Positions 3,374 through 38,559 of a stretch of 39,136 bases of DNA are shown here, one piece after another. Each line of letters opens with the position of its first letter. The first letter of the stretch is position 1. The notes under the pieces were generated by a model. It saw only the letters and a program-made list of their open reading frames with translations. It searched no databases and was not told the origin of the DNA. Source of the DNA: Octopus sinensis (Eukaryota); contig NW_021835717.1 in NCBI RefSeq assembly GCF_006345805.1, positions 1 to 39,136 on the forward strand, in the 5' to 3' direction. The translations under genes were made by a program, and so were the position numbers.

Positions 3374-4093
3374 ACTTTGTGAGTTTTTGTGTGTGTGTGC
3401 ATAGGAGCTTTGCTACAGCAGCCATAGTGAGACACTAGTAAACCGGGGAGTCTATTGACCATTGCATTTATCATCCCTGCTGCGGCCGTTGAAGATATGC
3501 CTCGCCACAGGCGGCCATTTACGGTGGTTAAGTTTCACCATTATTGTCTCTTTTCGTCTTGTTGTTGTTGCTGTTGTTATTGATGTATTGTCCAGCAAGC
3601 TGACCAGCATCTAGTAACAGGATCCCTTCTACACACATACACAAATACATTATAGTCAGACATACAGAACACCCGCAAAACACACACACACGCGCGCACA
3701 GTCAAACACACACAGGTACACTGATATATGCACTTTTACAGGCTTCTGCGTATTTGCGCACGCGCGTGTGTGTGTGTGTGCACATAGATGAAAATGTGTG
3801 CAGCTATAAATGCACATGTATGCACGTACAGGTATATGCGTTTATGCAAATGCATGTGTATGTACACTCGTATCTAGTCTAGTGGCGGTCTACTCTCGGG
3901 CAGGTCCTGCGCACGTGAGCTTTCTCTAGCGCTCTCTAAACGACCTGGGAGGTTTCCATATCCTCCCCAGCCGACGTTAAGTAGATTACTGGCACTTCGG
4001 CCATCCATGACTGGAACTTGGAAAAAATACTGGGGTGGTGTCCCGTAGCTTTCTCCAGACAAATGGGATTTGATCTCAGAATATAGACAGCCA

Positions 4094-4104
4094 GAAGATA
4101 TACC
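4094..4104. other. Target-site duplication copy (GAAGATATACC), downstream side of the 5.8S-SINE chimera
   Basis: Identical 11-mer at 4468-4478; 10/11 copy at 4483-4493. Confidence 0.8.
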
Positions 4105-4338
4105 TATTTCTTTACTACCCACAAGGGTCTAAACACAGAGGGGACAAACAAGGACAGACAAATCGATTAAGTCGATTACATCGACCCAAGTGTGTAACTG
4201 GTACTTAATTTATCGACCCCGAAAGGATGAAAGGCAAAGTCGACCTCGGCGGAATTTGAACTTAGAACGTAGCGGCAGACGAAATACCGCTAAGCATTTC
4301 GCCCGGCGTGCTAACGTTTCTGCCAGATCGCCGCCTTT
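4105..4338 (-). mobile_element. Full-length family A SINE (A/B-type head, tail ...TGTGGGTAGTAAAGAAATA)
   Basis: Near-identical to copies at 12493-12725 and 20560-20790. Confidence 0.93.
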
Positions 4339-4467
4339 GACCGGACGGGGCCCCGGGACGATAGAATCCCGGGGCCGCAATGTGCGTTCGAGGTGTCGAT
4401 GTTCACTGAGTCCTGCAATTCGCATCAGTTCACGACGGACGAGCCGAGTGATCCCCCGTCCAGGTCG
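4339..4467 (-). pseudogene. 5.8S rRNA retrocopy (~22-nt internal deletion, ~10-nt 3' truncation) fused to the 5' end of SINE A
   Basis: Minus strand: CGACCTGGACGGGGGATCACTCGGCTCGTCCGTCG|TGAACTGATGCGAATTGCAGGACTCAGTGAACATCGACACCTCGAACGCACATTGCGGCCCCGGGATTCTATCGTCCCGGGGCCCCGTCCGGTC. It contains the 5.8S signatures GGATCACTCGGCTCG, GAATTGCAGGAC and GAACGCACATTGCGGCC, plus the GC-rich CCCCGGGA/TCCCGGGG hairpin. Confidence 0.93.
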
Positions 4468-4482
4468 GAAGATATACCGTCG

Positions 4483-4543
4483 GAAGATATACTGCAAAGC
4501 ATTTCTACCGACGCGCCAACGATTCTGGTATACTCTCACCCGC
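4483..4543 (-). mobile_element. Old degraded A/B-type SINE head; its continuation lies at ~4064-4104 (host of the chimera insertion)
   Basis: Minus CAGAATCGTTGGCGCGTCGGTAGAAATGCTTTGCAGTATATCTTC aligns to CAGAATCGTTAGCACGCCGGGCGAAATGCTTAGCGGTATTTCGTC. Minus 4104-4064 GGTATATCTTCTGGCTGTCTATATTCTGAGATCAAATCCC aligns to GGTATTTCGTCTG...GTTCTGAGTTCAAATTCC. Confidence 0.72.
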
Positions 4544-4545
4544 AG

Positions 4546-6743: not shown

Positions 6744-6948
6744 CACGCCGGGCGAAATGCGTAGCGGTATTTCGTCTGCGTTACGTTGTGAGTTCAAATT
6801 CCGCCGAGGTCGACTTTGCCTTTCATCCTTTTGGGGTCGATAAATTAAGTACCAGTTACGCACTGGAGTCGATGTAATCGACTTAATACCTATGTCTGTC
6901 CTTGTTTGTCTCCTCTATGTTTAGTCCCTTGTGGGTAATAAAGAAATA
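6744..6948 (+). mobile_element. Family A SINE (5'-truncated), followed by a family B body starting at GGTATTTCGTC
   Basis: Ends GTGGGTAATAAAGAAATA at 6948; 6949-7118 is a B body ending GCCTTGTGCCTAGGGTAGAAAATAATAT. Confidence 0.9.
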
Positions 6949-7118
6949 GGTATTTCGTCCGTCTTTACGTTCTGAGTTCAAATTCCGCCGAGGTCGACTT
7001 TACCTTTCATCCTTTCGTGATCGATAAATTAAGTACGACTTGCGTACTGGAGTCTATCTAATTGATTGGTCCCCCCTTAAAAATTCCGTGCCTTGTGCCT
7101 AGGGTAGAAAATAATATC
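6949..7118 (+). mobile_element. Family B SINE body lacking its first ~45 nt
   Basis: GGTATTTCGTCCGTCTTTACGTTCTGAGTTCAAATTCC...GTAGAAAATAATAT. Confidence 0.88.
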
Positions 7119-11826: not shown

Positions 11827-12013
11827 TTGAAGGTGAAGGTATAGGGAAATGAAACTGAAATTAGACCATTCAGAATTAGGATTTATAGAAGTAACAAGTG
11901 TAAGACAATGGTAACAAACTCTTGCCGAGGGTGTTAACAAAGGGATCGAGCCCAACGTATTTCTGAGACGAACTTCTGAACTACAGGGCCATGCTGGTGC
12001 CACTTATACACTT

Positions 12014-12134
12014 ATACACGGCCATATCACGTTGAAAGCACCGGTTCTCGTCCGATCACCGAAGTTAAGCAACATCGAGCCTAGTTTGTACTTAGATGGG
12101 TGACCGCTTGGGAAACCTAAGTGCTGTAAGCATT
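12014..12134 (+). pseudogene. 5S rRNA-derived sequence (full length, ~10-15 substitutions) without a TTTT terminator
   Basis: ACGGCCATATCACGTTGAAAGCACCGGTTCTCGTCCGATCACCGAAGTTAAGCAACATCGAGCCTAGTTTGTACTTAGATGGGTGACCGCTTGGGAAACCTAAGTGCTGTAAGCATT matches metazoan 5S; box A (AGTTAAGC) and box C (TACTTAGATGGGTGACCG) are recognisable. Confidence 0.95.
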
Positions 12135-12140
12135 CCATTC

Positions 12141-12198
12141 AAATGGCGGTGCCCCAGCATGGCCACAGCTCGTGAGCTGAAACTAGATAAAATAAAAT
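12141..12198 (+). mobile_element. Family C-type retroposon 3' tail fused to the 5S copy
   Basis: AAATGGCGGTGCCCCAGCATGGCCACAGCTCGTGAGCTGAAACTAGATAAAATAAAAT versus C tail AAAGGCGGTGCTCCAGCATGGCCGCAGTCAAATGACTGAAACAAGTAAAAG. Confidence 0.88.
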
Positions 12199-12492
12199 AT
12201 TATAGGAGGGTAAAGACGTGAACCGAAATATTGACACACAACTCTGGTTTTCAGGGAATTGAAATACAAGCTGGAGCACCTGAATATATTCACAGTTAGG
12301 ATATAAAGAGAAAAGGGAGCTGATGCCGTAGTAAAAGACACTGTGGGTGTTACGTAAAGGGATCGAACTCCGACGTAATTCTGAAGGGTTTTGAAACGAC
12401 CTTCTTAACCACGCGGCCCCTGACGAAGACAATTCGAAAAGAAACGTTTCACTCGCAACGTTTTAGTTTTCATGGAATTGAAAGTTAAAATA

Positions 12493-12725
12493 TATTTCTT
12501 TACTACCCACAAGGGGCTAAACACAGAGGGGACAAACAAGGACAGACAAATGGATTAAGTCGATTATATCGACTCCAGTGCGTAACTGGTACTTAATTTA
12601 TCGACCCCAAAAGGATGAAAGACAAAGTCGACTTCGGAGGAATTTGAGCTCAGAACGTAACGGCAGACGAAATACGGCTACGCATTTCGCCCGGCGTGCT
12701 AACGTTTCTGCCAGCTCGCCGCCTT
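12493..12725 (-). mobile_element. Full-length family A SINE with 16-bp TSD
   Basis: TSD ATTGAAAGTT(A/G)AAATA at 12477-12492 and 12726-12741. Confidence 0.95.
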
Positions 12726-12944
12726 ATTGAAAGTTGAAATAAGACCACAAGAGGTTATTCAGTGCTAGGATTTCTAAAGAAAATTGGCAGCAATCTTCAA
12801 TTGGAATTGGTTTTGTTCAGCATCTTACCTTTAAGATAATTATATAATGAGATATGATATAGTTGTCACAATCACATCGTTGCCCTTTACTAAAAGAGTT
12901 CTCTTGGTGCAAGTGTACTATACAACTATTACTACAAATACTAC

Positions 12945-12952
12945 TACTACAA

Positions 12953-13021
<69 letters not shown>

Positions 13022-13084
13022 TCTACTACTACTACTACTACTAATAATAATAATAATAATAATGATAGTAATACAACTACTACA

Positions 13085-13136
<52 letters not shown>
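12945..13136. repeat. Compound (TAC)n-(AAT)n-(TAC)n microsatellite
   Basis: Direct reading; source of the poly-T/poly-Y ORFs. Confidence 0.97.
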
Positions 13137-13309
13137 GCTCCAGATGTTATGGCGTGGCCACAGTTAATGAAGGAAGCGCAAGTAATTTAAAAGAAGCTGA
13201 GAAAGTCAGGTGGTATCTATTATTCAGCTTTCACACCGGAGAAGGTGGAGTGAAGGTGGGACAAACGAATGAATGGTGGCTGTTTCTTATCTTAACATTC
13301 TTGCGACAC

Positions 13310-13620
13310 AAGGCGGCGAGCTGGCAGAATCGTTAGCACACCGGGCGAAATGCGTGGGTAGTAGCCCCTTGTGGGTAGTAAAGAAATAGGTATTTCGTCT
13401 GTCTTTACGTTCTGAGTTCAAATTCCGCCGAGGCCGACTTTGCCTTTCATCCTTTCGGGGGTCGATGAATTAAGTACCAATTGCGTGCTGGGGTCGAACT
13501 TTGACTTTTATTCTCCAGCACGGCCGTGGCCTTCGGGCTGAAACATTTTAAAGGATTTTAAGGATTTAAGTCGATAAAATAAATACCAGTTGAACATAGG
13601 ATTCGATGTGATCGAATAGG
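13310..13620 (+). mobile_element. Family B SINE interrupted by a 34-nt family A tail (13355-13388) and a C-type tail fragment (~13510-13567)
   Basis: Head to AAATGCG, then TGGGTAGTAGCCCCTTGTGGGTAGTAAAGAAATA, then GGTATTTCGTCTG...; later CTCCAGCACGGCCGTGGCCTTCGGGCTGAAAC. Confidence 0.85.
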
Positions 13621-20465: not shown

Positions 20466-20475
20466 TCGGAAAGGG

Positions 20476-20915
20476 CGGCTAGCCGGCATTGTTGTCAGCA
20501 TGCCGGGGAAACATGCTTCACTACATTTCGTCCGTCTTTACGTTCTAAGTTCAAATACCTATTTCTTTATTACCCACAAGGGGCTAAACACAGAGGGGAT
20601 AAACAAGGATAGACAAACGGATTAAGTTGATTGCATCGACCCCAGTGCGTGACTGGTACTTAATTTATCGACCCGAAAAGAATGAAAGGCAAAGTTGACC
20701 TCGGCGGAATTTGAACTCAAAACGTAGCGGCAGACGAAGTACCGTTAAGCATTTCGACCGGCGTGCTAACGTTTCTGCCAGCTCACCACCGAGGTTGACT
20801 ATGCCGTTCATCCTTTCAAGGTCGATAGAATTAAAAGCAGTTGAATACTGGGGTCGATGAAATCGACTGGGCCCCTCCCCTCAAATTTCAGGCCTTGTGC
20901 CAAAATTTTAACTCA
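20476..20915 (+). mobile_element. Family B SINE split by an inverted family A insertion
   Basis: Head to GTTCAAATACC (20559); the body resumes at ACCGAGGTTGAC (~20788). Confidence 0.82.
20560..20790 (-). mobile_element. Full-length family A SINE nested in B (opposite orientation)
   Basis: TATTTCTTTATTACCCACAAG...CAGCTCACCACC. Confidence 0.93.
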
Positions 20916-29170: not shown

Positions 29171-29364
29171 AAGACAGCAGCAATTACATCGTCCAAGAGG
29201 CATTTTATGCTGTAAAAAACGTACAAATGCTATTAAATTCACTTTAAATTTATATATATTCGTGAAATACCAAACTTTTTGTCACGCATCTGTAACCTGC
29301 ATATCCACGTATATATTTGCATGCATACATACATACATACATACATACATACATACATAAATAC

Positions 29365-29421
<57 letters not shown>

Positions 29422-29524
29422 CCTATGTACATACATATATACAAATATGTGTGTGTATGTGTGTACGTGTGTGTATATACTATTATTGAGTGAAATAGTA
29501 ACGCATGCCATATGTATGTATGAA

Positions 29525-29713
<189 letters not shown>

Positions 29714-29822
29714 GATTAAGATTCAGTTGAATTAGATACTTAAATTGAGGCAACAAGCCTGTTCGGTAAAGTGCGCGCAGCTCGAAAGGCCGTAATACAT
29801 TGATATTTAGACATCCTTGCTA

Positions 29823-29873
<51 letters not shown>

Positions 29874-29986
29874 CGCTCGAAACGTTAAACCCTCCTTCTT
29901 TCCTTCTTTCCTGAGCGTCTAATAATAATATATTGTTCCAAGTCCTCGCGTAGTTCTGTGTTTTTGTGCTTTCTTGTTTGGATTAA

Positions 29987-29989
<3 letters not shown>

Positions 29990-30080
<91 letters not shown>

Positions 30081-30175
30081 TTGTATACATACGTGTGTTC
30101 ACGCACGTGTGTATGTATGTATGTATATATATATGTATGTATGTATATATGTATGTATGTATGTATGTACGTATG

Positions 30176-30209
<34 letters not shown>

Positions 30210-31066
30210 TGTATTTGTGTATGTATGTATGCATGTATGTATGTATGTATGTATGTATGTATGTATGTATGTATGTATGTATGTATGCATGCATGCATGT
30301 ATCTATGTATGTATGTATGTATGTATGTATGTATGTATGTATGTACACATAGTAGAAGAGTTATTCATCTTTATCCGAGCACAGACTTTCCTGCAGATGG
30401 CGTAACATTTCATGGTAGGAAGTAGTACGGCGATGACATTTTTGGCCAGCTGCTGTGGATACGTCCACCACAGAATGTACGCCTGTGTGTTTGTGTCTCT
30501 GAATGTATGGTCGTATGTACTATATATTATGTACATATGTATGCAGGTATTTATGTGTGTATGTAAGTATATATGTATGTGTGTGTGTGCTTATGTATAT
30601 ACAAGTGGATTTCTGTGTGTGTATATGTATGTATGTATGTACGTATGCATGCATGCATGTATGTGTATGTACGTACGTGCGTATGTATGTATGCACGTAT
30701 GTATGCATGTGTATATATATGTGTGTTTATGTTATTATGTGAGAGTGTTTATGTGCGTCTGTGTATGTATATATGTACGCACGTATGTATGTACGTATCT
30801 ATGTATGTATGTGTGTATGTATGTATGCATGTATGTATGTATGTATGCATGTATGTATGTATGTACGTATGTATGTATGTGTGTATGTATGTATGTATGT
30901 ATGTGTGTGTATGTATGTATGTATGTATGTATGTATGTATGTATGTTTGTATGTATGTATGTATGTATGTATGTATGTGTGTATGTATGTATGTATGTAT
31001 GTATGTACGTACGTACGTACGTATGTATGTATGTATGTATGTATGTATGCATGTATGTATGTATAT
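29990..31066. repeat. Large degenerate (ATGT)n/(AT)n array
   Basis: Direct reading; source of the MYVC-repeat ORFs. Confidence 0.96.
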
Positions 31067-31883
31067 GCGTAGAATTAAAATTAATGTCTGTTAAAGATAT
31101 AAATTTGACTGCAATGTTAAGTTAGGGTATCGAATGTACGCCATTGTCATGTAGAGTCGTCTGACCTCTCTCAACTGACAGCCAGAGCAGCTGCCCCACT
31201 TTTCTATTGTACGATGTCGTTTAATTTGTTATCTAACTTAACCTTTTCACTAACAGCTATTTAACTAAAGTTACAGGAATTTAAGTGGTCGTAGTACCTC
31301 AGTTCTCTTCAATTTTACATCTATCACCTGCAGGCATTGTTTGAAAATGTAGGTCATTATTCAGTTGCGTAAGTTCCCTGGGTAGAACGGGTACACTAAA
31401 ATATCTAGAGTGAATTTGAACCTGTAACCCCTAAGGTTATAATTCAGTAAATTATTTATACAGTCACATGAGCGCTTCTATTAAGGTTATGGCTAAAACT
31501 AACTGTAGGCCCATCTGGGCGACAGAGCCCACTGTAGCGCCCGCTTTTGTCACAAGACCTGAGTGAATGGATTGTTTATCTGGGACAACTGATTGAAACA
31601 ATGTCATTTGAAACAGAGGAATAAACTATAGGGAAGGGTCATCTTAGAAGGCAAAACTGAGTTTAAATGAGTATGTCACGTGCTCTGAGAAGGACAATTG
31701 AACTGATGAATGTGCAACGCATTATTGTAACGACTATTCTGTGACCAACCTAATCTCGATAACTAATTATATAGCGATGTATTTTCCAAATATGTTTGCT
31801 TATGTATTGTCACGCCACTCCCTATTTCAATCGCTCGTATAATTGGTATCGTGAAACCCTGAGTCTCGATCCAAGAAACCATA

Positions 31884-33062: not shown

Positions 33063-33249
33063 ATGGGGGGTGCTGCAAATAAACTGTATCGAAACATAAT
33101 TCGAGGCCTATGAATTAAAATAATACACTAATTTCTATATTTAAAAAACTTATGCTGCCGGTGCCAATTCTCAAGCGACATAACTTCCGGTTTATATACG
33201 CGTGCATAAATAATCTAGAAGTAGTCTCTTTTTTATATTCATATGCACA

Positions 33250-33527
33250 CACACACGTATATATGCATGTATGTATGTATGTATGTATGTATGTGTGTGT
33301 GTATGTATGTATGTATGTATGTATGTATGTATGTTTGTATGTATGTATGTATGTATGTATGTATGTATGTACGTATGTATGTATGTATGTGTGAATGTGT
33401 GAATGTATGTATGTATTATGTATGTATGTATGTATGTATTTATGTATTTATGTATTTATGTATGTATATATGTATGTATGTATTATGTATGTATGTATGT
33501 ATGTATGTGTGTATTATGTATGTATGC

Positions 33528-33558
<31 letters not shown>

Positions 33559-33561
33559 TGC

Positions 33562-33592
<31 letters not shown>

Positions 33593-33651
33593 TTATGTAT
33601 GTATATGTATGTGTGTATGTATGTATGTATGTGTGTATTATGTATGTATGC

Positions 33652-33682
<31 letters not shown>

Positions 33683-33797
33683 TGTATGTATGCATATGTA
33701 TGTATGTATGTATGCATATGTATGTATGTATTATGTATGTATTTATTTATGTATGTATTTATATATGTATGTATGTATGTATGTATGCATGTATGTA
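33250..33797. repeat. Degenerate (ATGT)n array with recurring TATT/GCAT interruptions
   Basis: Direct reading. Confidence 0.96.
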
Positions 33798-33888
33798 TCA
33801 GCAGCTGGTGACGGCCGGAAGCCTTTGATGTTATGCCCATTCATTTAGGGTTGATTTGAGGGGGTAGATAATATATATATATTTATAC

Positions 33889-33933
<45 letters not shown>

Positions 33934-34633
33934 GTTTCCACTCTATTTAGAGAGGAAAATAACAACACCGAAAGCTTGTCATTCAGTCAGAAGTGGTTCA
34001 GGCAGTAAATGGGGCGGGTCGTCAGGGAGTTGGAGAGAAAAATCCCTAATATTAATTCTCGACCTTGAGTTCAAATCCAACTGAGATTAACTTTGCCTTT
34101 TCCCCCCTTCAAGGGGGGGCGAGAAAAAAAAGCATCAATTCAAGATAGTAGATTGGTAAAATTGTAATAAAGACGAACAGCATTCTTTACGGTACTTGTT
34201 ATGTCCCTCTGCGTTCTGGGTTCAAATCCCGACATGGGAATGGGAGGAGTCTATGGGGTTGGGGTAGACTTCATCCATCATTCGGATTACGTCTACGTCG
34301 CTAAATGACACTTTGGTCTCTCTTTAGTAGAGTCTATTCTGTTGCAAATATTTGGGGGCGAGTCTCCCTTCCACCAGCCCAGGGAAAGGGATCCTGTAAA
34401 GATGGAGAAGGAAAAAAATTGGTAAGTGAAGTTATGCACTCTCCCTTTTAACTGTAAATACGCGCGCACGCGCACGCATGCACACACACACATACACACA
34501 CATTCACACACACACTCGATTATACATATACAAATAATGTTATAAACTGTCATACACACAAAGATAAGTATATACACAATACATATGTGTATGTATACAT
34601 ACATATATATATATATATACGTATAAATATACA

Positions 34634-34685
<52 letters not shown>

Positions 34686-35312
34686 TATATCAGTGTGCGT
34701 GTGTAATCCAAAGAGCTAGCGGCAAATATTTACATATTTGACAAGTGTGTACGGAATGTCGTGCACGATAAATCCTTAATTCATTTTAATTTCTTTAATG
34801 GAGAGAGAAGATAACTAAAAGCCCAGCAGCAACACATGACATTAACATTAATTTCGCAGTCAAAGTGAGAAGAATCTACTCTTTACAGATTCATCCATTA
34901 GCGTTTCTTATATCCACAAGATTCCCCATTTTCTACATTCGTTATTACCTTAATCAAAATTCCCACTGTATAATTAGTTATTTTTGTCTCTCTGGCCCCG
35001 GTTCGATTTGTCTGAGTTATAAGCTAATTATAATCTGTAACTTTTATTGTTAAATCTATAAGCTTAGATATACAATAATTTTTGTTTTTCTTCTTTATTT
35101 TCGTATGCATCTCATTATCTTGTATCCTACATCTCACGGTTTCATTTATTCCGTATCGTCTTCTAAACACTTCAATATAATGATACTGTTCTTAATATCT
35201 GTTATTGTATTTAGGAATGGTCATTTTGCCAGTTAAGCCAGTAGGAATACAAAATACAAAATGGCTGACCGTTAGTAATGAGAGACACACAAATAAAAAA
35301 GAAGAAAGCAAA

Positions 35313-35357: not shown

Positions 35358-36054
35358 GAAATAAGATTAAGATTAATGTAAAAAATAAATAACGCTGAAG
35401 CAGAGTAACACCAAAATGACCGTTCTGAAATACAACAACATCTGTTTCAACACACGATTTCACATCAAGAATCTTGCAAAACAAATATATAAACGTTCTT
35501 AATATCATTATATTATAAATCTCCTGGCACTCTGAAGCGAGCAATTATGTTGTATACAAAACTTGCTCGAAGTATTTTTGTTCTATGAGTTGCTTATATA
35601 TTAATACAAATACTATCCTTCTTTCCTTATAGATAAATTTGCAATCCGAGTCGTAGACACGATATGGTTAGATGGTTAAGAAGTCCGCTTTGTAAACTCG
35701 CGGACGCGGGTTTGGTCCCACTGCGCGTCGTTTTTTGACGACCAAATGAAACTTTTGTCAGACTTGGATCGACCTATTGAAGGATGCTGTCAGGCTGTAA
35801 AAAACACGTAGGACATGTCATTGCGAAAACTCTATCTTGAGGATAGCCTGTTAGCACTTGTATTCTTGTATTTTAAATATATATATATATATTGGAGCAT
35901 GTTTATAAATAGGCATGTCAGTGTATATATGTGGCTGGGTTCCGAAAAAGAAAGTGCGCATTTACACATACACACATGCGCACTCACACACACACAGACA
36001 CATCAAATACACAAGACACACACACTTATATGTACATATGCATATATATAGATT

Positions 36055-36486
36055 CGTGTGTATAAGTATGTATGTATATGTATGGATGTACGTATATGTA
36101 TATATGTCAATAACTGTGAGTGTATGTGTGCGCTTATGTGTGTGTGTTTGTGTGAGTGTAGGAGTGTATCTGTGTGTGTGTGTATTTATGTGTTTGTTTG
36201 CGTCTATGTGTGTGTGTGTTTGTGGGACGGGGGGGTGAAATATTATATATCAGCTGTTAATCTATCTGTGGTTATATGCATATCATTGTGTTGTGTGTGT
36301 GCGTCTGAAGGCGTATGTGTGCGCGTGTGTAAATATGCGTGCACGGCACGTGTGTGTGTGTGTATATGTGAGTATGTGTGTGTGTGCGTGTGTGTGTGTG
36401 TGAGTGTGTATGTGTGTGTGTGTGAGTGTATGTGTCTGACGTTGAATTTAGTACGTGTTTATGTTTACATATGTGAGTTTCGTAAT

Positions 36487-36528
<42 letters not shown>

Positions 36529-36585
36529 ACACACACACACTCACACACATATGTATGTATTTATGTATGAATTTTATGTATGTAT

Positions 36586-36624
<39 letters not shown>

Positions 36625-36690
36625 TTGTGTGTGTGTGTGTGTCTGTGTGTGTCTGTGTGTGTGTGTGTGTGTCAGTGTGTGTGTGTGAGT
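36055..36690. repeat. Degenerate (GT)n/(CA)n/(AT)n complex
   Basis: Direct reading. Confidence 0.93.
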
Positions 36691-36959
36691 GTACGCTGAA
36701 GAGAAAGGGAGTTACAAAGAAACCGAGGCTGTCAGGGAATGTGAGGGTGAGTGGTGAGTGTGAGGTGTGAGTGACGTCTATATATAAAGGGATGTTATAT
36801 GGAGTGTAACTGGAGTGTTAACATCATTCTGCCTTTGTAGCTTTTCCCCACAAGATGTCTCCACTTGTTTATCTTGTTCTTGTCACTGTCTTCGGTAAGT
36901 CGGACATTCTTCACAACACATTTTTCTTCTTTTCTTTTTTGTGTTTTCCAAAACATTCT

Positions 36960-37900
36960 TCGTCACCGCCGTCTTCCTCGTCTTCGTAATCTTTGTCATC
37001 TTTTTTCTTCTTTCTTTTCTTTTTCTTTCATTTTTTCTTTCTTTCTTTCTGTCTTTATTTCTTTCATTCTTCTTCTTCTTCTTCTTCGTCTTCTTCTTCT
37101 TCTTCTTCTTCTCTTCTTCTTCTTCTTCTTCTTCTTCTTCTTCTTCTTCTTCTTCGTCTTCTTCTTCACCATCATCATCATCAACATCATCATCATTATC
37201 ATCATTTTCTTCTTCTTCTACATCATCATCATCATCACCATCATCTTCTTCTTCTTCTACATCATCATCATCATCACCATCATCTTCTTCTTCTTCTACA
37301 TCATCATCATCATCACCATCATCTTCTTCTTCTTCCTCTTCTTCCTCTTCTTCTTCATTATCATCATCATCATTAGCAGCAGCAGCATTATCATCCTCTT
37401 CTTCTTCTTCTCTCTCTCCTTCATCTTCATCATCATCTTATTCTTCTTCATCTCCTCCTCCTCCACCTTCCTCTTCTTTCTCTCTTTCGTTTCCTTCCTT
37501 TATGTCTTCCTTCTTTACTTTTACTTTTGCTCCTTCTCCTTCCCGTTCTTTCTTCTTTTCTTCTTTTATTTTCCTTCATCCTATCTTTTTTTCCTCTTAT
37601 TCTCTTTCTTCTTTTATTTTGCTATTATTCTCCTCTCCCGCCTTTCTTTGTCAAATTTCTTTCCATCCATTCTCTTTCTTTCTCATTCATTTCATTCCAT
37701 TTCTTTCAAATAACTTCTTCATTTGCCATTGCTTTGTTCTTTCAATGTTTCGTTGCTTTTACCGCTTCTCTCTTTCCTTCCTTCTTCCTTCCCTTCATTT
37801 CTATTTTTTCCTTCTTATTTTTTATTTCATTCATTCCTCTTTTCCCCAAATCTCTTTCACTGTATCTTTCTTCGTTGTATTCTTTTGTTGCTTTCATTCA
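36960..37900. repeat. ~1-kb pyrimidine-rich tract with (TTC)n/(ATC)n core
   Basis: Direct reading; stop-poor, hence the spurious 445-aa and 282-aa ORFs. Confidence 0.95.
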
Positions 37901-38018
37901 ACTTTCTTCGCTCTACTTCTCTATCTCTCTCCATATTTTTCGTGTGTGTCTGTGTGTGAGTGTTGTGCTTGTGTGTGTGGTTATGTATTGTATATATATA
38001 TATATATGCATACAAATA

Positions 38019-38097
<79 letters not shown>

Positions 38098-38559
38098 TAG
38101 ATTTTCAAATAACTCATTCGTTTTTGTAAGAGACATGTGGGATAAAGGTAGATTTATGTTTTATGTACATGTATATTTACATACACTAACGCATGTAGTC
38201 ATTGCATGGCTCCATCCATGTCCTCCATGTCTCCCCTCTCCATCTTCAACTACATTCAACAAAAGTGTAATTCCGTAACCTGTTGAGTTAATGTAATTAA
38301 ATGTTCTTAAGGATTCCAAGTGCATTTTCAACAATATTTCGTAATACGTCACCTTTATATATTTTTGTATGCGCATATCTGTGTGCACGTGTACGTGTAT
38401 ATGTTTGTGTGTACGATCGGTTTTTGGAGTTCCGGTGTCCACCTTGGATTGAGTGAAAATGTAACAGGTGGATGTTTGTTTTTCGGTGGAATGTGAAGTT
38501 TTCCAAAGCAAAATTGTTGCAGTGGACGAAACTGGAAAAACTCCATATTTATATAAAAC

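What the first reader, a model, noticed from the sequence alone, without database searches (positions are those of the whole stretch)
4064..4543. 5.8S rRNA-SINE chimeric retrocopy inserted as one TSD-bounded unit inside an older SINE
Seen: on the minus strand the order is old SINE head (4543-4483) | GTATATCTTC | CGAC-GGTATATCTTC | near-full 5.8S rRNA (4467-4339) | full-length SINE A (4338-4105) | GGTATATCTTC | rest of the old SINE. The 5.8S starts at about its natural 5' end, carries no ITS sequence and joins the SINE head directly. The duplicated target flanks the 5.8S+SINE pair, not the SINE alone. A 15-nt unit (GTCGGAAGATATAC(C/T), 4464-4478 / 4479-4493) duplicates the target plus the first four 5.8S bases. 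Established: LINE reverse transcriptases make bipartite chimeras by template switching (e.g. U6/L1). Inference: RT copied the SINE RNA, jumped onto mature 5.8S rRNA and stuttered at the 5' junction. 5.8S is an unusual partner. If multi-copy, it is a 5.8S-headed composite retroposon.
Basis: partly seen in the sequence, partly recalled or inferred. Interest (0 to 1): 0.85.

Follow-up and report, generated by a model that had tools for sequence, protein, structure and literature searches.

The report
5.8S rRNA–SINE chimeric retrocopy in octopus
A reverse-transcribed copy of 5.8S ribosomal RNA is fused head-to-tail to a complete short interspersed element (SINE) and was inserted as one unit into an older SINE; this is a clean example of a known copying accident with an unusual RNA partner, and nothing suggests it has a function or belongs to a family.

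Summary
On the minus strand, 4464-4339 is a 5.8S rRNA copy (Rfam 48.8 bits). It matches octopod rDNA almost base for base, apart from one 22-nt internal deletion, and carries no ITS1, ITS2, 18S or 28S sequence. It runs straight into a full-length SINE (4338-4105). The pair is bracketed by GGTATATCTTC. Removing the pair and one repeat copy restores the head of an older SINE. The SINE alone has no flanking repeat.

The best explanation is one target-primed reverse transcription event. The enzyme copied the SINE RNA to its 5' end and then continued on 5.8S rRNA. The join lies in a stretch (AGGCGG) shared by the SINE 5' end and the 5.8S 3' end. That overlap is suggestive only: 7.7% of shuffles do as well.

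The 15-nt tandem duplication at the 5' junction is real. Later replication slippage followed by one CpG transition explains it as well as enzyme "stuttering" does.

No second copy turned up, but no octopus genome could be searched, so copy number is untested. A 5.8S-headed family is unlikely because 5.8S has no Pol III promoter.

This is a new member of a known kind (LINE-mediated chimeric retrocopies). Interest is modest.

The parts
4493..4545 (-). 5' part of the older, diverged SINE head that served as the target
   Evidence: It aligns to positions about 17-60 of the young SINE consensus once the insert is removed.
4483..4492 (-). Target-site duplication, copy 1 (GTATATCTTC). The preceding base A4493 was probably G (CpG to CpA), which would make an 11-nt repeat.
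   Evidence: The SINE consensus has GCGG at this position.
4464..4493 (-). Two tandem 15-nt units (CGGTATATCTTCCGA twice, with one A/G difference), made of the target copy plus the filler CGA(C)
   Evidence: Tandem Repeats Finder: period 15, 1.9 copies, 100% match over 4464-4492. Coordinates checked.
4339..4464 (-). 5.8S rRNA retrocopy with a 22-nt internal deletion between 4434 and 4433 and no ITS on either side
   Evidence: Rfam RF00002, 48.8 bits. Alignment to octopod rDNA L001:3093-3251 and L002:765-923. BLAST with ITS1, ITS2, 18S and 28S finds nothing near the locus.
4331..4338 (-). Junction overlap AAAGGCGG. It fits both the SINE 5' end (AAGGCGGCG) and the 5.8S 3' end (GAGAGGCGG).
   Evidence: AGGCGG is the longest shared string, and 7.7% of composition-matched shuffles reach 6 nt.
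4105..4338 (-). Full-length young SINE ('SINE A'), 7 differences in 234 nt from a five-copy consensus
   Evidence: Copies at 12493-12725(-), 20560-20790(-), 6744-6948(+) and L003:10142-10375. The SINE ends are defined by the target-site duplications of copy B and the L003 copy.
4094..4104 (-). Target-site duplication, copy 3 (GGTATATCTTC), immediately after the SINE 3' end ...AAAGAAATA
4060..4093 (-). Continuation of the older SINE head, including the B-box-like GAGATCAAATCCC
   Evidence: Colinear with consensus positions about 61-88.

Best explanation
This is a bipartite chimeric retrocopy made in a single target-primed reverse transcription event.

Inferred sequence of events:
1. A LINE-encoded endonuclease and reverse transcriptase nicked an older SINE at GGTATATCTTC. 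The partner LINE was not identified; RTE and Dong elements are the reported active octopus LINEs.
2. It primed on the 3' end of a young SINE RNA and copied that RNA to its very 5' end.
3. Instead of finishing, it carried on with a 5.8S rRNA molecule as template. It entered within about 2-11 nt of the 3' end, where the new cDNA end (the complement of AAAGGCGG) can pair with the 5.8S sequence AGAGGCGG.
4. It copied the 5.8S to about its mature 5' end and skipped a GC-rich hairpin on the way, which gives the 22-nt deletion between short CG repeats.
5. The product was joined to the upstream target with a few filler bases (CGA/CGAC), leaving an 11-nt target-site duplication.

Shown here: the anatomy, the duplication, the absence of ITS, and the full-length SINE. 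Inferred: the order of templates, pairing at the join, the hairpin skip, and the identity of the enzyme.

The unit is a dead-on-arrival insertion with no evident function.
For: -: Rfam 5.8S match.
- near-identity to octopod rDNA from CCTGGACGG to GGTC, and an exact 22-nt deletion.
- no ITS1, ITS2, 18S or 28S similarity at the locus.
- the SINE 5' end (AAGGCGGCG) and 3' end (AAAGAAATA) are fixed by independent copies with their own target-site duplications, so SINE A is complete.
- GGTATATCTTC flanks the pair and not the SINE alone. Removing the pair with one repeat copy restores the older SINE head.
- the deleted segment covers most of a predicted 6-bp GC hairpin (GCGCGG-CUAU-CCGCGU).
- Divergence is similar in the two halves: 7 of 234 nt for the SINE and 2 substitutions in about 115 nt for the 5.8S.
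- Literature: the template-switch model and TSD-flanked ncRNA-SINE chimeras (PMC2104539); SINE-to-5S rRNA switching proposed as the origin of composite SINE heads (PMC4824008).
Against: - This is a single locus, with no orthologous empty site and no genome-wide view.
- The rDNA used for comparison comes from related octopods, not from the window's own species.
- The shared AGGCGG is not statistically compelling (7.7% of shuffles).
- One G of the 5.8S (GTCGAGAGG against GTC-AAAGG) is unaccounted for under simple pairing.
- A tandem 15-nt duplication at the 5' junction is not a standard outcome of target-primed reverse transcription.
Confidence: 0.75

Rival explanations
1. The chimeric RNA was already fused before reverse transcription. 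The 5.8S and the SINE RNA could have been joined by RNA ligation, or co-transcribed from an rDNA unit with a SINE inserted at the 5.8S/ITS2 boundary. The fused RNA was then retrotransposed through the SINE tail. This is still one TSD-bounded event.
For: It predicts the same anatomy: one duplication around both parts and no ITS. Both RNA ligation and template switching are discussed as routes to sense-oriented RNA/LINE-1 chimeras (10.1101/2025.02.02.635956).
Against: The join falls in a 6-8-nt stretch common to both RNAs. Pairing-guided switching predicts this; end-to-end ligation does not. From general knowledge: mature 5.8S has a trimmed 3'-OH end and Pol III SINE transcripts have a 5'-triphosphate, which are not the ends an RtcB-type ligase uses. 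Nothing was found here pointing to an rDNA unit carrying this SINE.
Confidence: 0.1
2. There were two separate events. Either a SINE landed exactly beside an existing 5.8S retrocopy, or a 5.8S cDNA was captured later at a break at the 5' edge of an existing SINE insertion. The 15-nt duplication would then be a repair scar.
For: The young SINE favours (A/G)GTAT(A/T)T targets and repeatedly hits this motif inside older SINEs, so repeated hits at one site are conceivable. Three copies of the target motif and a tandem duplication at the 5' junction are unusual for a simple insertion. The SINE head DNA could pair with the 5.8S 3' end and prime a tailless-type insertion (integration-site complementarity, PMC5322556).
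Against: Neither half has its own flanking repeat. The sequence 5' of the SINE (…CCGGTC) does not recur 3' of it, and the sequence 5' of the 5.8S does not recur 3' of the 5.8S. Both extra target copies lie upstream of the 5.8S, not between the two parts. The second event would also have to fall exactly at the first base of the SINE.
Confidence: 0.08
3. The locus is one copy of a multi-copy, 5.8S-headed composite SINE family that spreads as a unit.
For: Nothing direct. Composite SINE heads built by switching onto 5S rRNA are described (PMC4824008). The same window also holds a 5S rRNA copy followed by a SINE-type tail.
Against: There is only one 5.8S match in 39 kb against about 14 SINE A matches. 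None of the SINE-bearing ORFs in two protein databases spans a 5.8S junction, though that sample is tiny. From general knowledge: 5.8S is a Pol I product with no internal Pol III promoter, and the SINE's own promoter would start transcription at the SINE 5' end, so daughter copies would lose the 5.8S.
Confidence: 0.06
4. A fragment of rDNA moved here at the DNA level (an rDNA orphon) and was later hit by a SINE.
For: None found.
Against: There is no ITS1, ITS2, 18S or 28S sequence. The boundaries coincide with the ends of the mature RNA. The target-site duplication encloses both parts.
Confidence: 0.01

Closest known systems
LINE-mediated bipartite chimeric retrogenes (U6/L1, U3/L1, 5S/L1, 28S/L1 and others in mammals)
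   Same: Two unrelated RNA copies are fused in the same orientation. The element recognised by the reverse transcriptase is at the 3' side and a cellular non-coding RNA at the 5' side. One target-site duplication encloses the pair (PMC2104539; 10.1101/2025.02.02.635956).
   Different: The 3' partner here is a SINE rather than a LINE. It is complete rather than 5'-truncated, so the switch happened at the end of the template. There is no poly(A), because this SINE ends in AAAGAAATA. The 5' partner is 5.8S rRNA, which is not in the partner lists of those papers. The host is a cephalopod.
WEIRD-MgSINE chimera of Magnaporthe grisea
   Same: A non-coding cellular RNA is fused to a SINE and flanked by 12-bp direct repeats, attributed to a template switch by the SINE's partner LINE (PMC2104539).
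   Different: There the SINE is 5'-truncated, switching occurs at GCC(A/U) hot spots, and the partner RNA recurs in 33 chimeras. Here there is one locus with a switch at the SINE 5' terminus.
Composite SINE heads thought to arise by a SINE-to-5S rRNA template switch
   Same: The proposed first step is the same: the enzyme copies a SINE and then continues onto a small ribosomal RNA, which puts that rRNA at the 5' end (Nishihara et al. 2006, as cited in PMC4824008).
   Different: From general knowledge, 5S rRNA brings its own internal Pol III promoter, so the product can become a new SINE family. 5.8S is cut from a Pol I precursor and brings no promoter, so this product should not propagate.
Tailless retropseudogenes of small RNAs
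   Same: These are retrocopies of abundant structured RNAs, with short complementarity at the priming or joining site and breakpoints linked to RNA structure (PMC5322556).
   Different: Those are solitary copies primed directly on the target. In the human survey, nucleolar Pol I RNAs were under-represented: only two 18S and ten 28S copies were found, although 5.8S was among the queries. Here the 5.8S rides on a SINE.

Membership tests
LINE-mediated chimeric retrocopy (template-switch chimera) | Copies of two unrelated RNAs fused directly in the same orientation | tested here: met
   5.8S at 4464-4339 and SINE at 4338-4105, both on the minus strand, with no intervening sequence.
LINE-mediated chimeric retrocopy (template-switch chimera) | The 3' component is a retroelement with its intact 3' end, the enzyme's entry point | tested here: met
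   SINE A ends in ...GTAGTAAAGAAATA, like copies B, C, D and the L003 copy.
LINE-mediated chimeric retrocopy (template-switch chimera) | The 5' component is a copy of a processed RNA, without the genomic flanks of its gene | tested here: met
   No ITS1, ITS2, 18S or 28S similarity. Caveat: the rDNA used comes from related octopods, not the source species.
LINE-mediated chimeric retrocopy (template-switch chimera) | One target-site duplication around the whole chimera and none around either part | tested here: met
   GGTATATCTTC at 4468-4478, 4483-4493 and 4094-4104. Excision restores the older SINE head. There are no repeats around the SINE alone or the 5.8S alone.
LINE-mediated chimeric retrocopy (template-switch chimera) | Made by a LINE reverse transcriptase switching RNA templates during cDNA synthesis | not testable with these tools
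   Inferred from the anatomy and the shared AGGCGG at the join. No partner LINE was identified in the window. Pfam found no family above its cut-off in the six ORFs scanned, five of them among the longest in the window; the one weak match (DOCK_N) lies in a low-complexity ORF.
Composite SINE family with an rRNA-derived head | Many copies share the same junction at different genomic sites | not testable with these tools
   No octopus genome could be searched. There is one copy in the window and none among the SINE-bearing ORFs in the protein databases. The JGI metagenome collection contains no copy of this SINE at all.
Composite SINE family with an rRNA-derived head | The head supplies an internal Pol III promoter so that the whole unit is transcribed | not tested
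   From established knowledge, 5.8S is processed from the Pol I precursor and has no A/B or C box. The only B-box-like motif in the unit (GAGTTCAAATTCC) lies inside the SINE part.
rDNA orphon (DNA-level rDNA fragment) | Spacer or neighbouring rRNA gene sequence contiguous with the 5.8S | tested here: not met

The most novel reading that the evidence does not exclude
The 5' end of this abundant octopus SINE (AAGGCGGCG) matches the 3' end of octopod 5.8S rRNA (…AGGCGG). The enzyme may therefore slip from SINE RNA onto 5.8S repeatedly. If so, octopus genomes would hold many independent 5.8S-SINE chimeras with near-identical junctions but without the shared 22-nt deletion, or even a sub-family that spreads from an upstream promoter. 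The 5S rRNA copy followed by a SINE-type tail at 12014-12200 would then be a second sign that small ribosomal RNAs are frequent secondary templates in this lineage, unlike in mammals.
Probability: 0.15. Interest if true: 0.55.

Novelty: new member of a known kind. Interest (0 to 1): 0.3.

Why it matters
It adds 5.8S rRNA, a nucleolar Pol I product that is scarce or absent among mammalian retrocopies, to the RNAs that a LINE reverse transcriptase can pick up after finishing a SINE template. The example is unusually clear, because the older SINE acts as a built-in empty site.

The sequence shared by the SINE 5' end and the 5.8S 3' end suggests a simple rule for partner choice: pairing of the finished cDNA end. 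That rule can be tested genome-wide.

Beyond that it is a single inert insertion, with no sign of function or amplification.

Tried and rejected
- Second copy in the window. BLAST of the 5.8S part and of the whole unit against the window found SINE copies only. A permissive Rfam scan returned only the one 5.8S, one 5S, and low-complexity miRNA noise.
- Junction copies through protein space. The 109-aa ORF spanning old SINE, 5.8S and SINE (4210-4539, minus strand) was searched in the 5.8-billion-protein index and exhaustively in 1.84 billion representatives. All hits cover either the SINE part or the 5.8S part. P0012 seemed to span the junction, but its upstream part is encoded by a simple repeat. 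Only about ten SINE-bearing ORFs exist in these databases, so this negative result carries little weight. I ran no further search on the plus-strand ORF for the same reason.
- JGI metagenome scan for the junction pattern: no hits. A control with the SINE head alone also found nothing, so that collection holds no octopus SINE and the negative is uninformative.
- A gene anchor to reach an orthologous locus. The weak DOCK_N match of ORF 12863-13336 is a poly-threonine low-complexity ORF. The 445-aa ORF at 36941-38278 is also low complexity.
- tRNA origin of the SINE. ARAGORN found no tRNA and Rfam gave no tRNA match at E<0.1. 'tRNA-derived' therefore rests only on a B-box-like motif and the literature on octopus SINEs.
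- Species of L001. A literature search for the assembly accession found nothing.
- Buzdin et al. 2003 (PMC169886) is not held in the library.

Full report

Yes. Rfam places a 5.8S rRNA match at 4466-4331 on the minus strand (48.8 bits, gathering score 42, E 1.8e-9). It is the only 5.8S match in the 39-kb window, even at a permissive threshold.

It also finds about ten partial or older copies. One more copy lies in an Octopus vulgaris chromosome segment fetched later (L003:10142-10375).

The motif GTATATCTTC occurs three times on the minus strand, at 4492-4483, 4477-4468 and 4103-4094. With one mismatch allowed, GGTATATCTTC has 4 matches in the window against 1.03 expected. Tandem Repeats Finder reports the 15-nt duplication at 4464-4492.

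**2. Anatomy on the minus strand**

| Segment | Coordinates |
|---|---|
| Older SINE head | 4545-4493 |
| GTATATCTTC, copy 1 | 4492-4483 |
| CGAC | 4482-4479 |
| G | 4478 |
| GTATATCTTC, copy 2 | 4477-4468 |
| CGA | 4467-4465 |
| 5.8S homology | 4464-4339 |
| AAAGGCGG (shared stretch) | 4338-4331 |
| Rest of SINE A | 4330-4105 |
| G | 4104 |
| GTATATCTTC, copy 3 | 4103-4094 |
| Rest of the older SINE head | 4093-4060 |

When the insert is removed and one repeat copy kept, the flanks form one colinear alignment to positions 17-88 of the young SINE consensus. The score is 74, against 64 with two repeat copies and 56 with none. BLAST of this reconstructed empty site also crosses the junction in a single hit. 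The older SINE therefore acts as a built-in empty site and confirms that the duplication encloses the 5.8S and the SINE together.

**3. The 5.8S part is a copy of the RNA, not of rDNA**

Two protein-database hits to the ORF across the region led to octopod rDNA contigs. L001 is from NCBI assembly GCA_024449705.1 and carries 18S-ITS1-5.8S-ITS2-28S. L002 is an ENA metagenome scaffold. Their 5.8S genes are identical to each other, while their spacers differ.

The window matches them from CCTGGACGG to CCGGTC with two C-to-T differences and one clean 22-nt deletion (ATGAAGAGCGCGGCTATCCGCG). BLAST with ITS1, ITS2, 18S and 28S finds nothing at or near the locus.

By homology with the Rfam model, and with human 5.8S (recalled from memory rather than fetched here), the mature octopod RNA should run from about AAACCCTGG to about GAGAGGCGGTT. 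On that basis the copy starts within about 4 nt of the mature 5' end. It stops 2-11 nt short of the 3' end, depending on how the shared stretch is assigned.

The deleted segment lies between short CG/TCCG repeats. It covers most of a predicted 6-bp GC hairpin, GCGCGG-CUAU-CCGCGU. This is what a reverse transcriptase skipping a stable stem would produce, although later replication slippage is not excluded.

The bases CGA(C) upstream of the homology do not match the three octopod rDNAs, which read GAAACCCTGG (L001, L002, and P0014 by back-translation). They could be filler, a shortened 5' end, or a species difference.

**4. The SINE part is complete, and the join lies in a shared stretch**

Two independent copies have clear target-site duplications of their own. 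Copy B has TATTT(C/T)AACTTTCAAT. The L003 copy has AGTATAT(T/G)TTCAAT(G/A)TTTTC. These fix the SINE ends at AAGGCGGCG… and …AAAGAAATA. Five of eight heads, plus two ORF-derived heads, show AA or AAA before GGCGGCG.

The 5.8S continues …GGTCGAGAGGCGGTT, while the window reads …GGTC-AAAGGCGGCGATCTGG. The string AGGCGG is common to both sources. The two apparent "mutations" at the 5.8S 3' end are simply the SINE 5' end.

Composition-matched shuffles reach a 6-nt shared string in 7.7% of trials, so this is suggestive and not proof.

SINE A differs from a five-copy consensus at 7 of 234 positions. The 5.8S part differs from rDNA at 2 of about 115 positions. This is compatible with both halves being the same age.

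**5. Mechanism**

In the sense orientation the order is 5'-5.8S-SINE-3', and target-primed reverse transcription starts at the 3' end of its template. The SINE RNA was therefore the first template and the 5.8S the second. This follows the established model for chimeric retrogenes (PMC2104539).

The most likely course is as follows. The older SINE was nicked at GGTATATCTTC. The SINE RNA was copied in full. The cDNA end then paired with the AGAGGCGG near the 5.8S 3' end, and the 5.8S was copied to about its 5' end with one hairpin skipped. Finally the product was joined to the upstream target with a few extra bases. I put this at about 0.75.

The rivals, in order of weight:
- **Fusion already present at the RNA level** (ligation or co-transcription), about 0.10. 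It is disfavoured by the shared stretch at the join and by the end chemistry of the two RNAs.
- **Two separate events or break-repair capture**, about 0.08. It is disfavoured because neither half has its own repeat, and because the second event would have to fall exactly on the first base of the SINE.
- **A multi-copy 5.8S-headed family**, about 0.06.
- **A DNA-level rDNA fragment**, about 0.01, already contradicted by the absence of spacer sequence.

**6. The 15-nt duplication**

The two units are CAGTATATCTTCCGA and CGGTATATCTTCCGA. The SINE consensus has CGG at this position. The A is therefore what CpG decay would give, and at birth the two units were probably identical.

A later 15-bp slippage duplication explains this as well as "stuttering" by the enzyme does. 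I could not separate the two explanations. This reading also makes the original target-site duplication 11 nt long (GGTATATCTTC).

**7. Why a family is unlikely**

From established knowledge, 5.8S is cut from the Pol I precursor and has no internal Pol III promoter. The SINE's own promoter would start transcription at the SINE 5' end, so daughter RNAs would lack the 5.8S. The older SINE's A-box and B-box regions are now about 400 nt apart, so it cannot supply a promoter either.

If many 5.8S-SINE junctions exist in the genome, recurrent pairing-guided switching is the more likely cause. The 22-nt deletion distinguishes the two cases. A shared deletion points to amplification. Deletions that are absent or differ between copies point to independent events.

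**8. Comparison with what is known**

Chimeric retrocopies made by LINE enzymes have been described in the literature since the early 2000s. A 2025 comparative survey lists U6, U3, U5, 5S, 28S, tRNA, 7SL, 7SK and Y RNAs as LINE-1 partners and does not mention 5.8S.

In a human survey of tailless retropseudogenes, 5.8S was among the queries. Nucleolar Pol I RNAs were nevertheless under-represented, with only two 18S and ten 28S copies found (PMC5322556).

A non-coding RNA fused to a SINE and flanked by 12-bp repeats is known in Magnaporthe (PMC2104539). A SINE-to-5S rRNA switch has been proposed as the origin of composite SINE heads (PMC4824008). Searches combining octopus, 5.8S and SINE found nothing relevant.

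This is therefore a new member of a known kind, with an unusual partner, a cephalopod host, and a switch at the very end of a complete SINE template.

**9. Limits**

No octopus genome could be searched by DNA. Copy number and the orthologous site are untested. The protein-space and metagenome searches that were possible have almost no power. The reference rDNA comes from related octopods and not from the source species.

**10. Verdict**

The core interpretation is supported; the "stutter" and the "family" are not. Novelty: new member of a known kind. Interest: 0.3.

Noticed in passing
window 12014-12200 (+): A full-length 5S rRNA copy (Rfam 92.9 bits, 12014-12132) has no T-run terminator. Nine nt downstream lies the last 55-60 nt of a different octopus SINE family, in the same orientation (full copies end at e.g. 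16586, 1472 and L003:11628). It is either a 5S-headed SINE or a second small-rRNA/SINE chimera in the same window. An 8-nt tandem duplication (CTTATACA twice, about 11997-12012) sits at its 5' edge. No convincing target-site duplication was found.
   Followed up: partly
window 11986-11999 and 12150-12163: A 14-nt inverted repeat (GGCCATGCTGGTGC / GGCCATGCTGGGGC, 13 of 14 matching) flanks the 5S copy. Its alignment score of 23 exceeds the maximum of 19 in 500 shuffles. It may reflect two SINE pieces in opposite orientation. The meaning is unknown.
   Followed up: partly
window 4094-4104, 6949-6959, 20549-20559, 12484-12492; L003:10376-10386: The young SINE is followed by (A/G)GTAT(A/T)T in 4 of 5 copies: GGTATATCTTC, GGTATTTCGTC, GGTATTTGAAC and AGTATATGTTC. 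The fifth has TATTTTAAC. Where an upstream repeat copy exists, these bases come from the target, so this looks like a target-site or priming preference. Two of the five hits fall on the same internal motif of older SINEs (consensus positions about 51-61).
   Followed up: partly
window 20471-20868: Another nested pair: a minus-strand young SINE (20560-20790) interrupts an older plus-strand SINE (20471-20559 and 20786-20868).
   Followed up: no
window 6744-7065 (+): A 5'-truncated young SINE (from consensus position 29) is followed directly by an older SINE that starts at position 51. The expected upstream half of the older SINE is missing. This could be a deletion at insertion or a different kind of join.
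   Followed up: no
window 11928-11966 and 12344-12384: Two copies of a ~40-nt tRNA-3'-half-like segment (GGGTGTTA..AAAGGGATCGA.C.C.ACGTA.TTCTGA) lie about 420 nt apart. They belong to yet another repeat family. ARAGORN calls no tRNA in the window.
   Followed up: no
window 12863-13336, 29300-31100, 33200-34700, 36000-38300: Long simple-sequence tracts give long low-complexity ORFs (poly-Thr, poly-Ser) and dozens of spurious sub-threshold miRNA matches in the permissive Rfam scan.
   Followed up: yes
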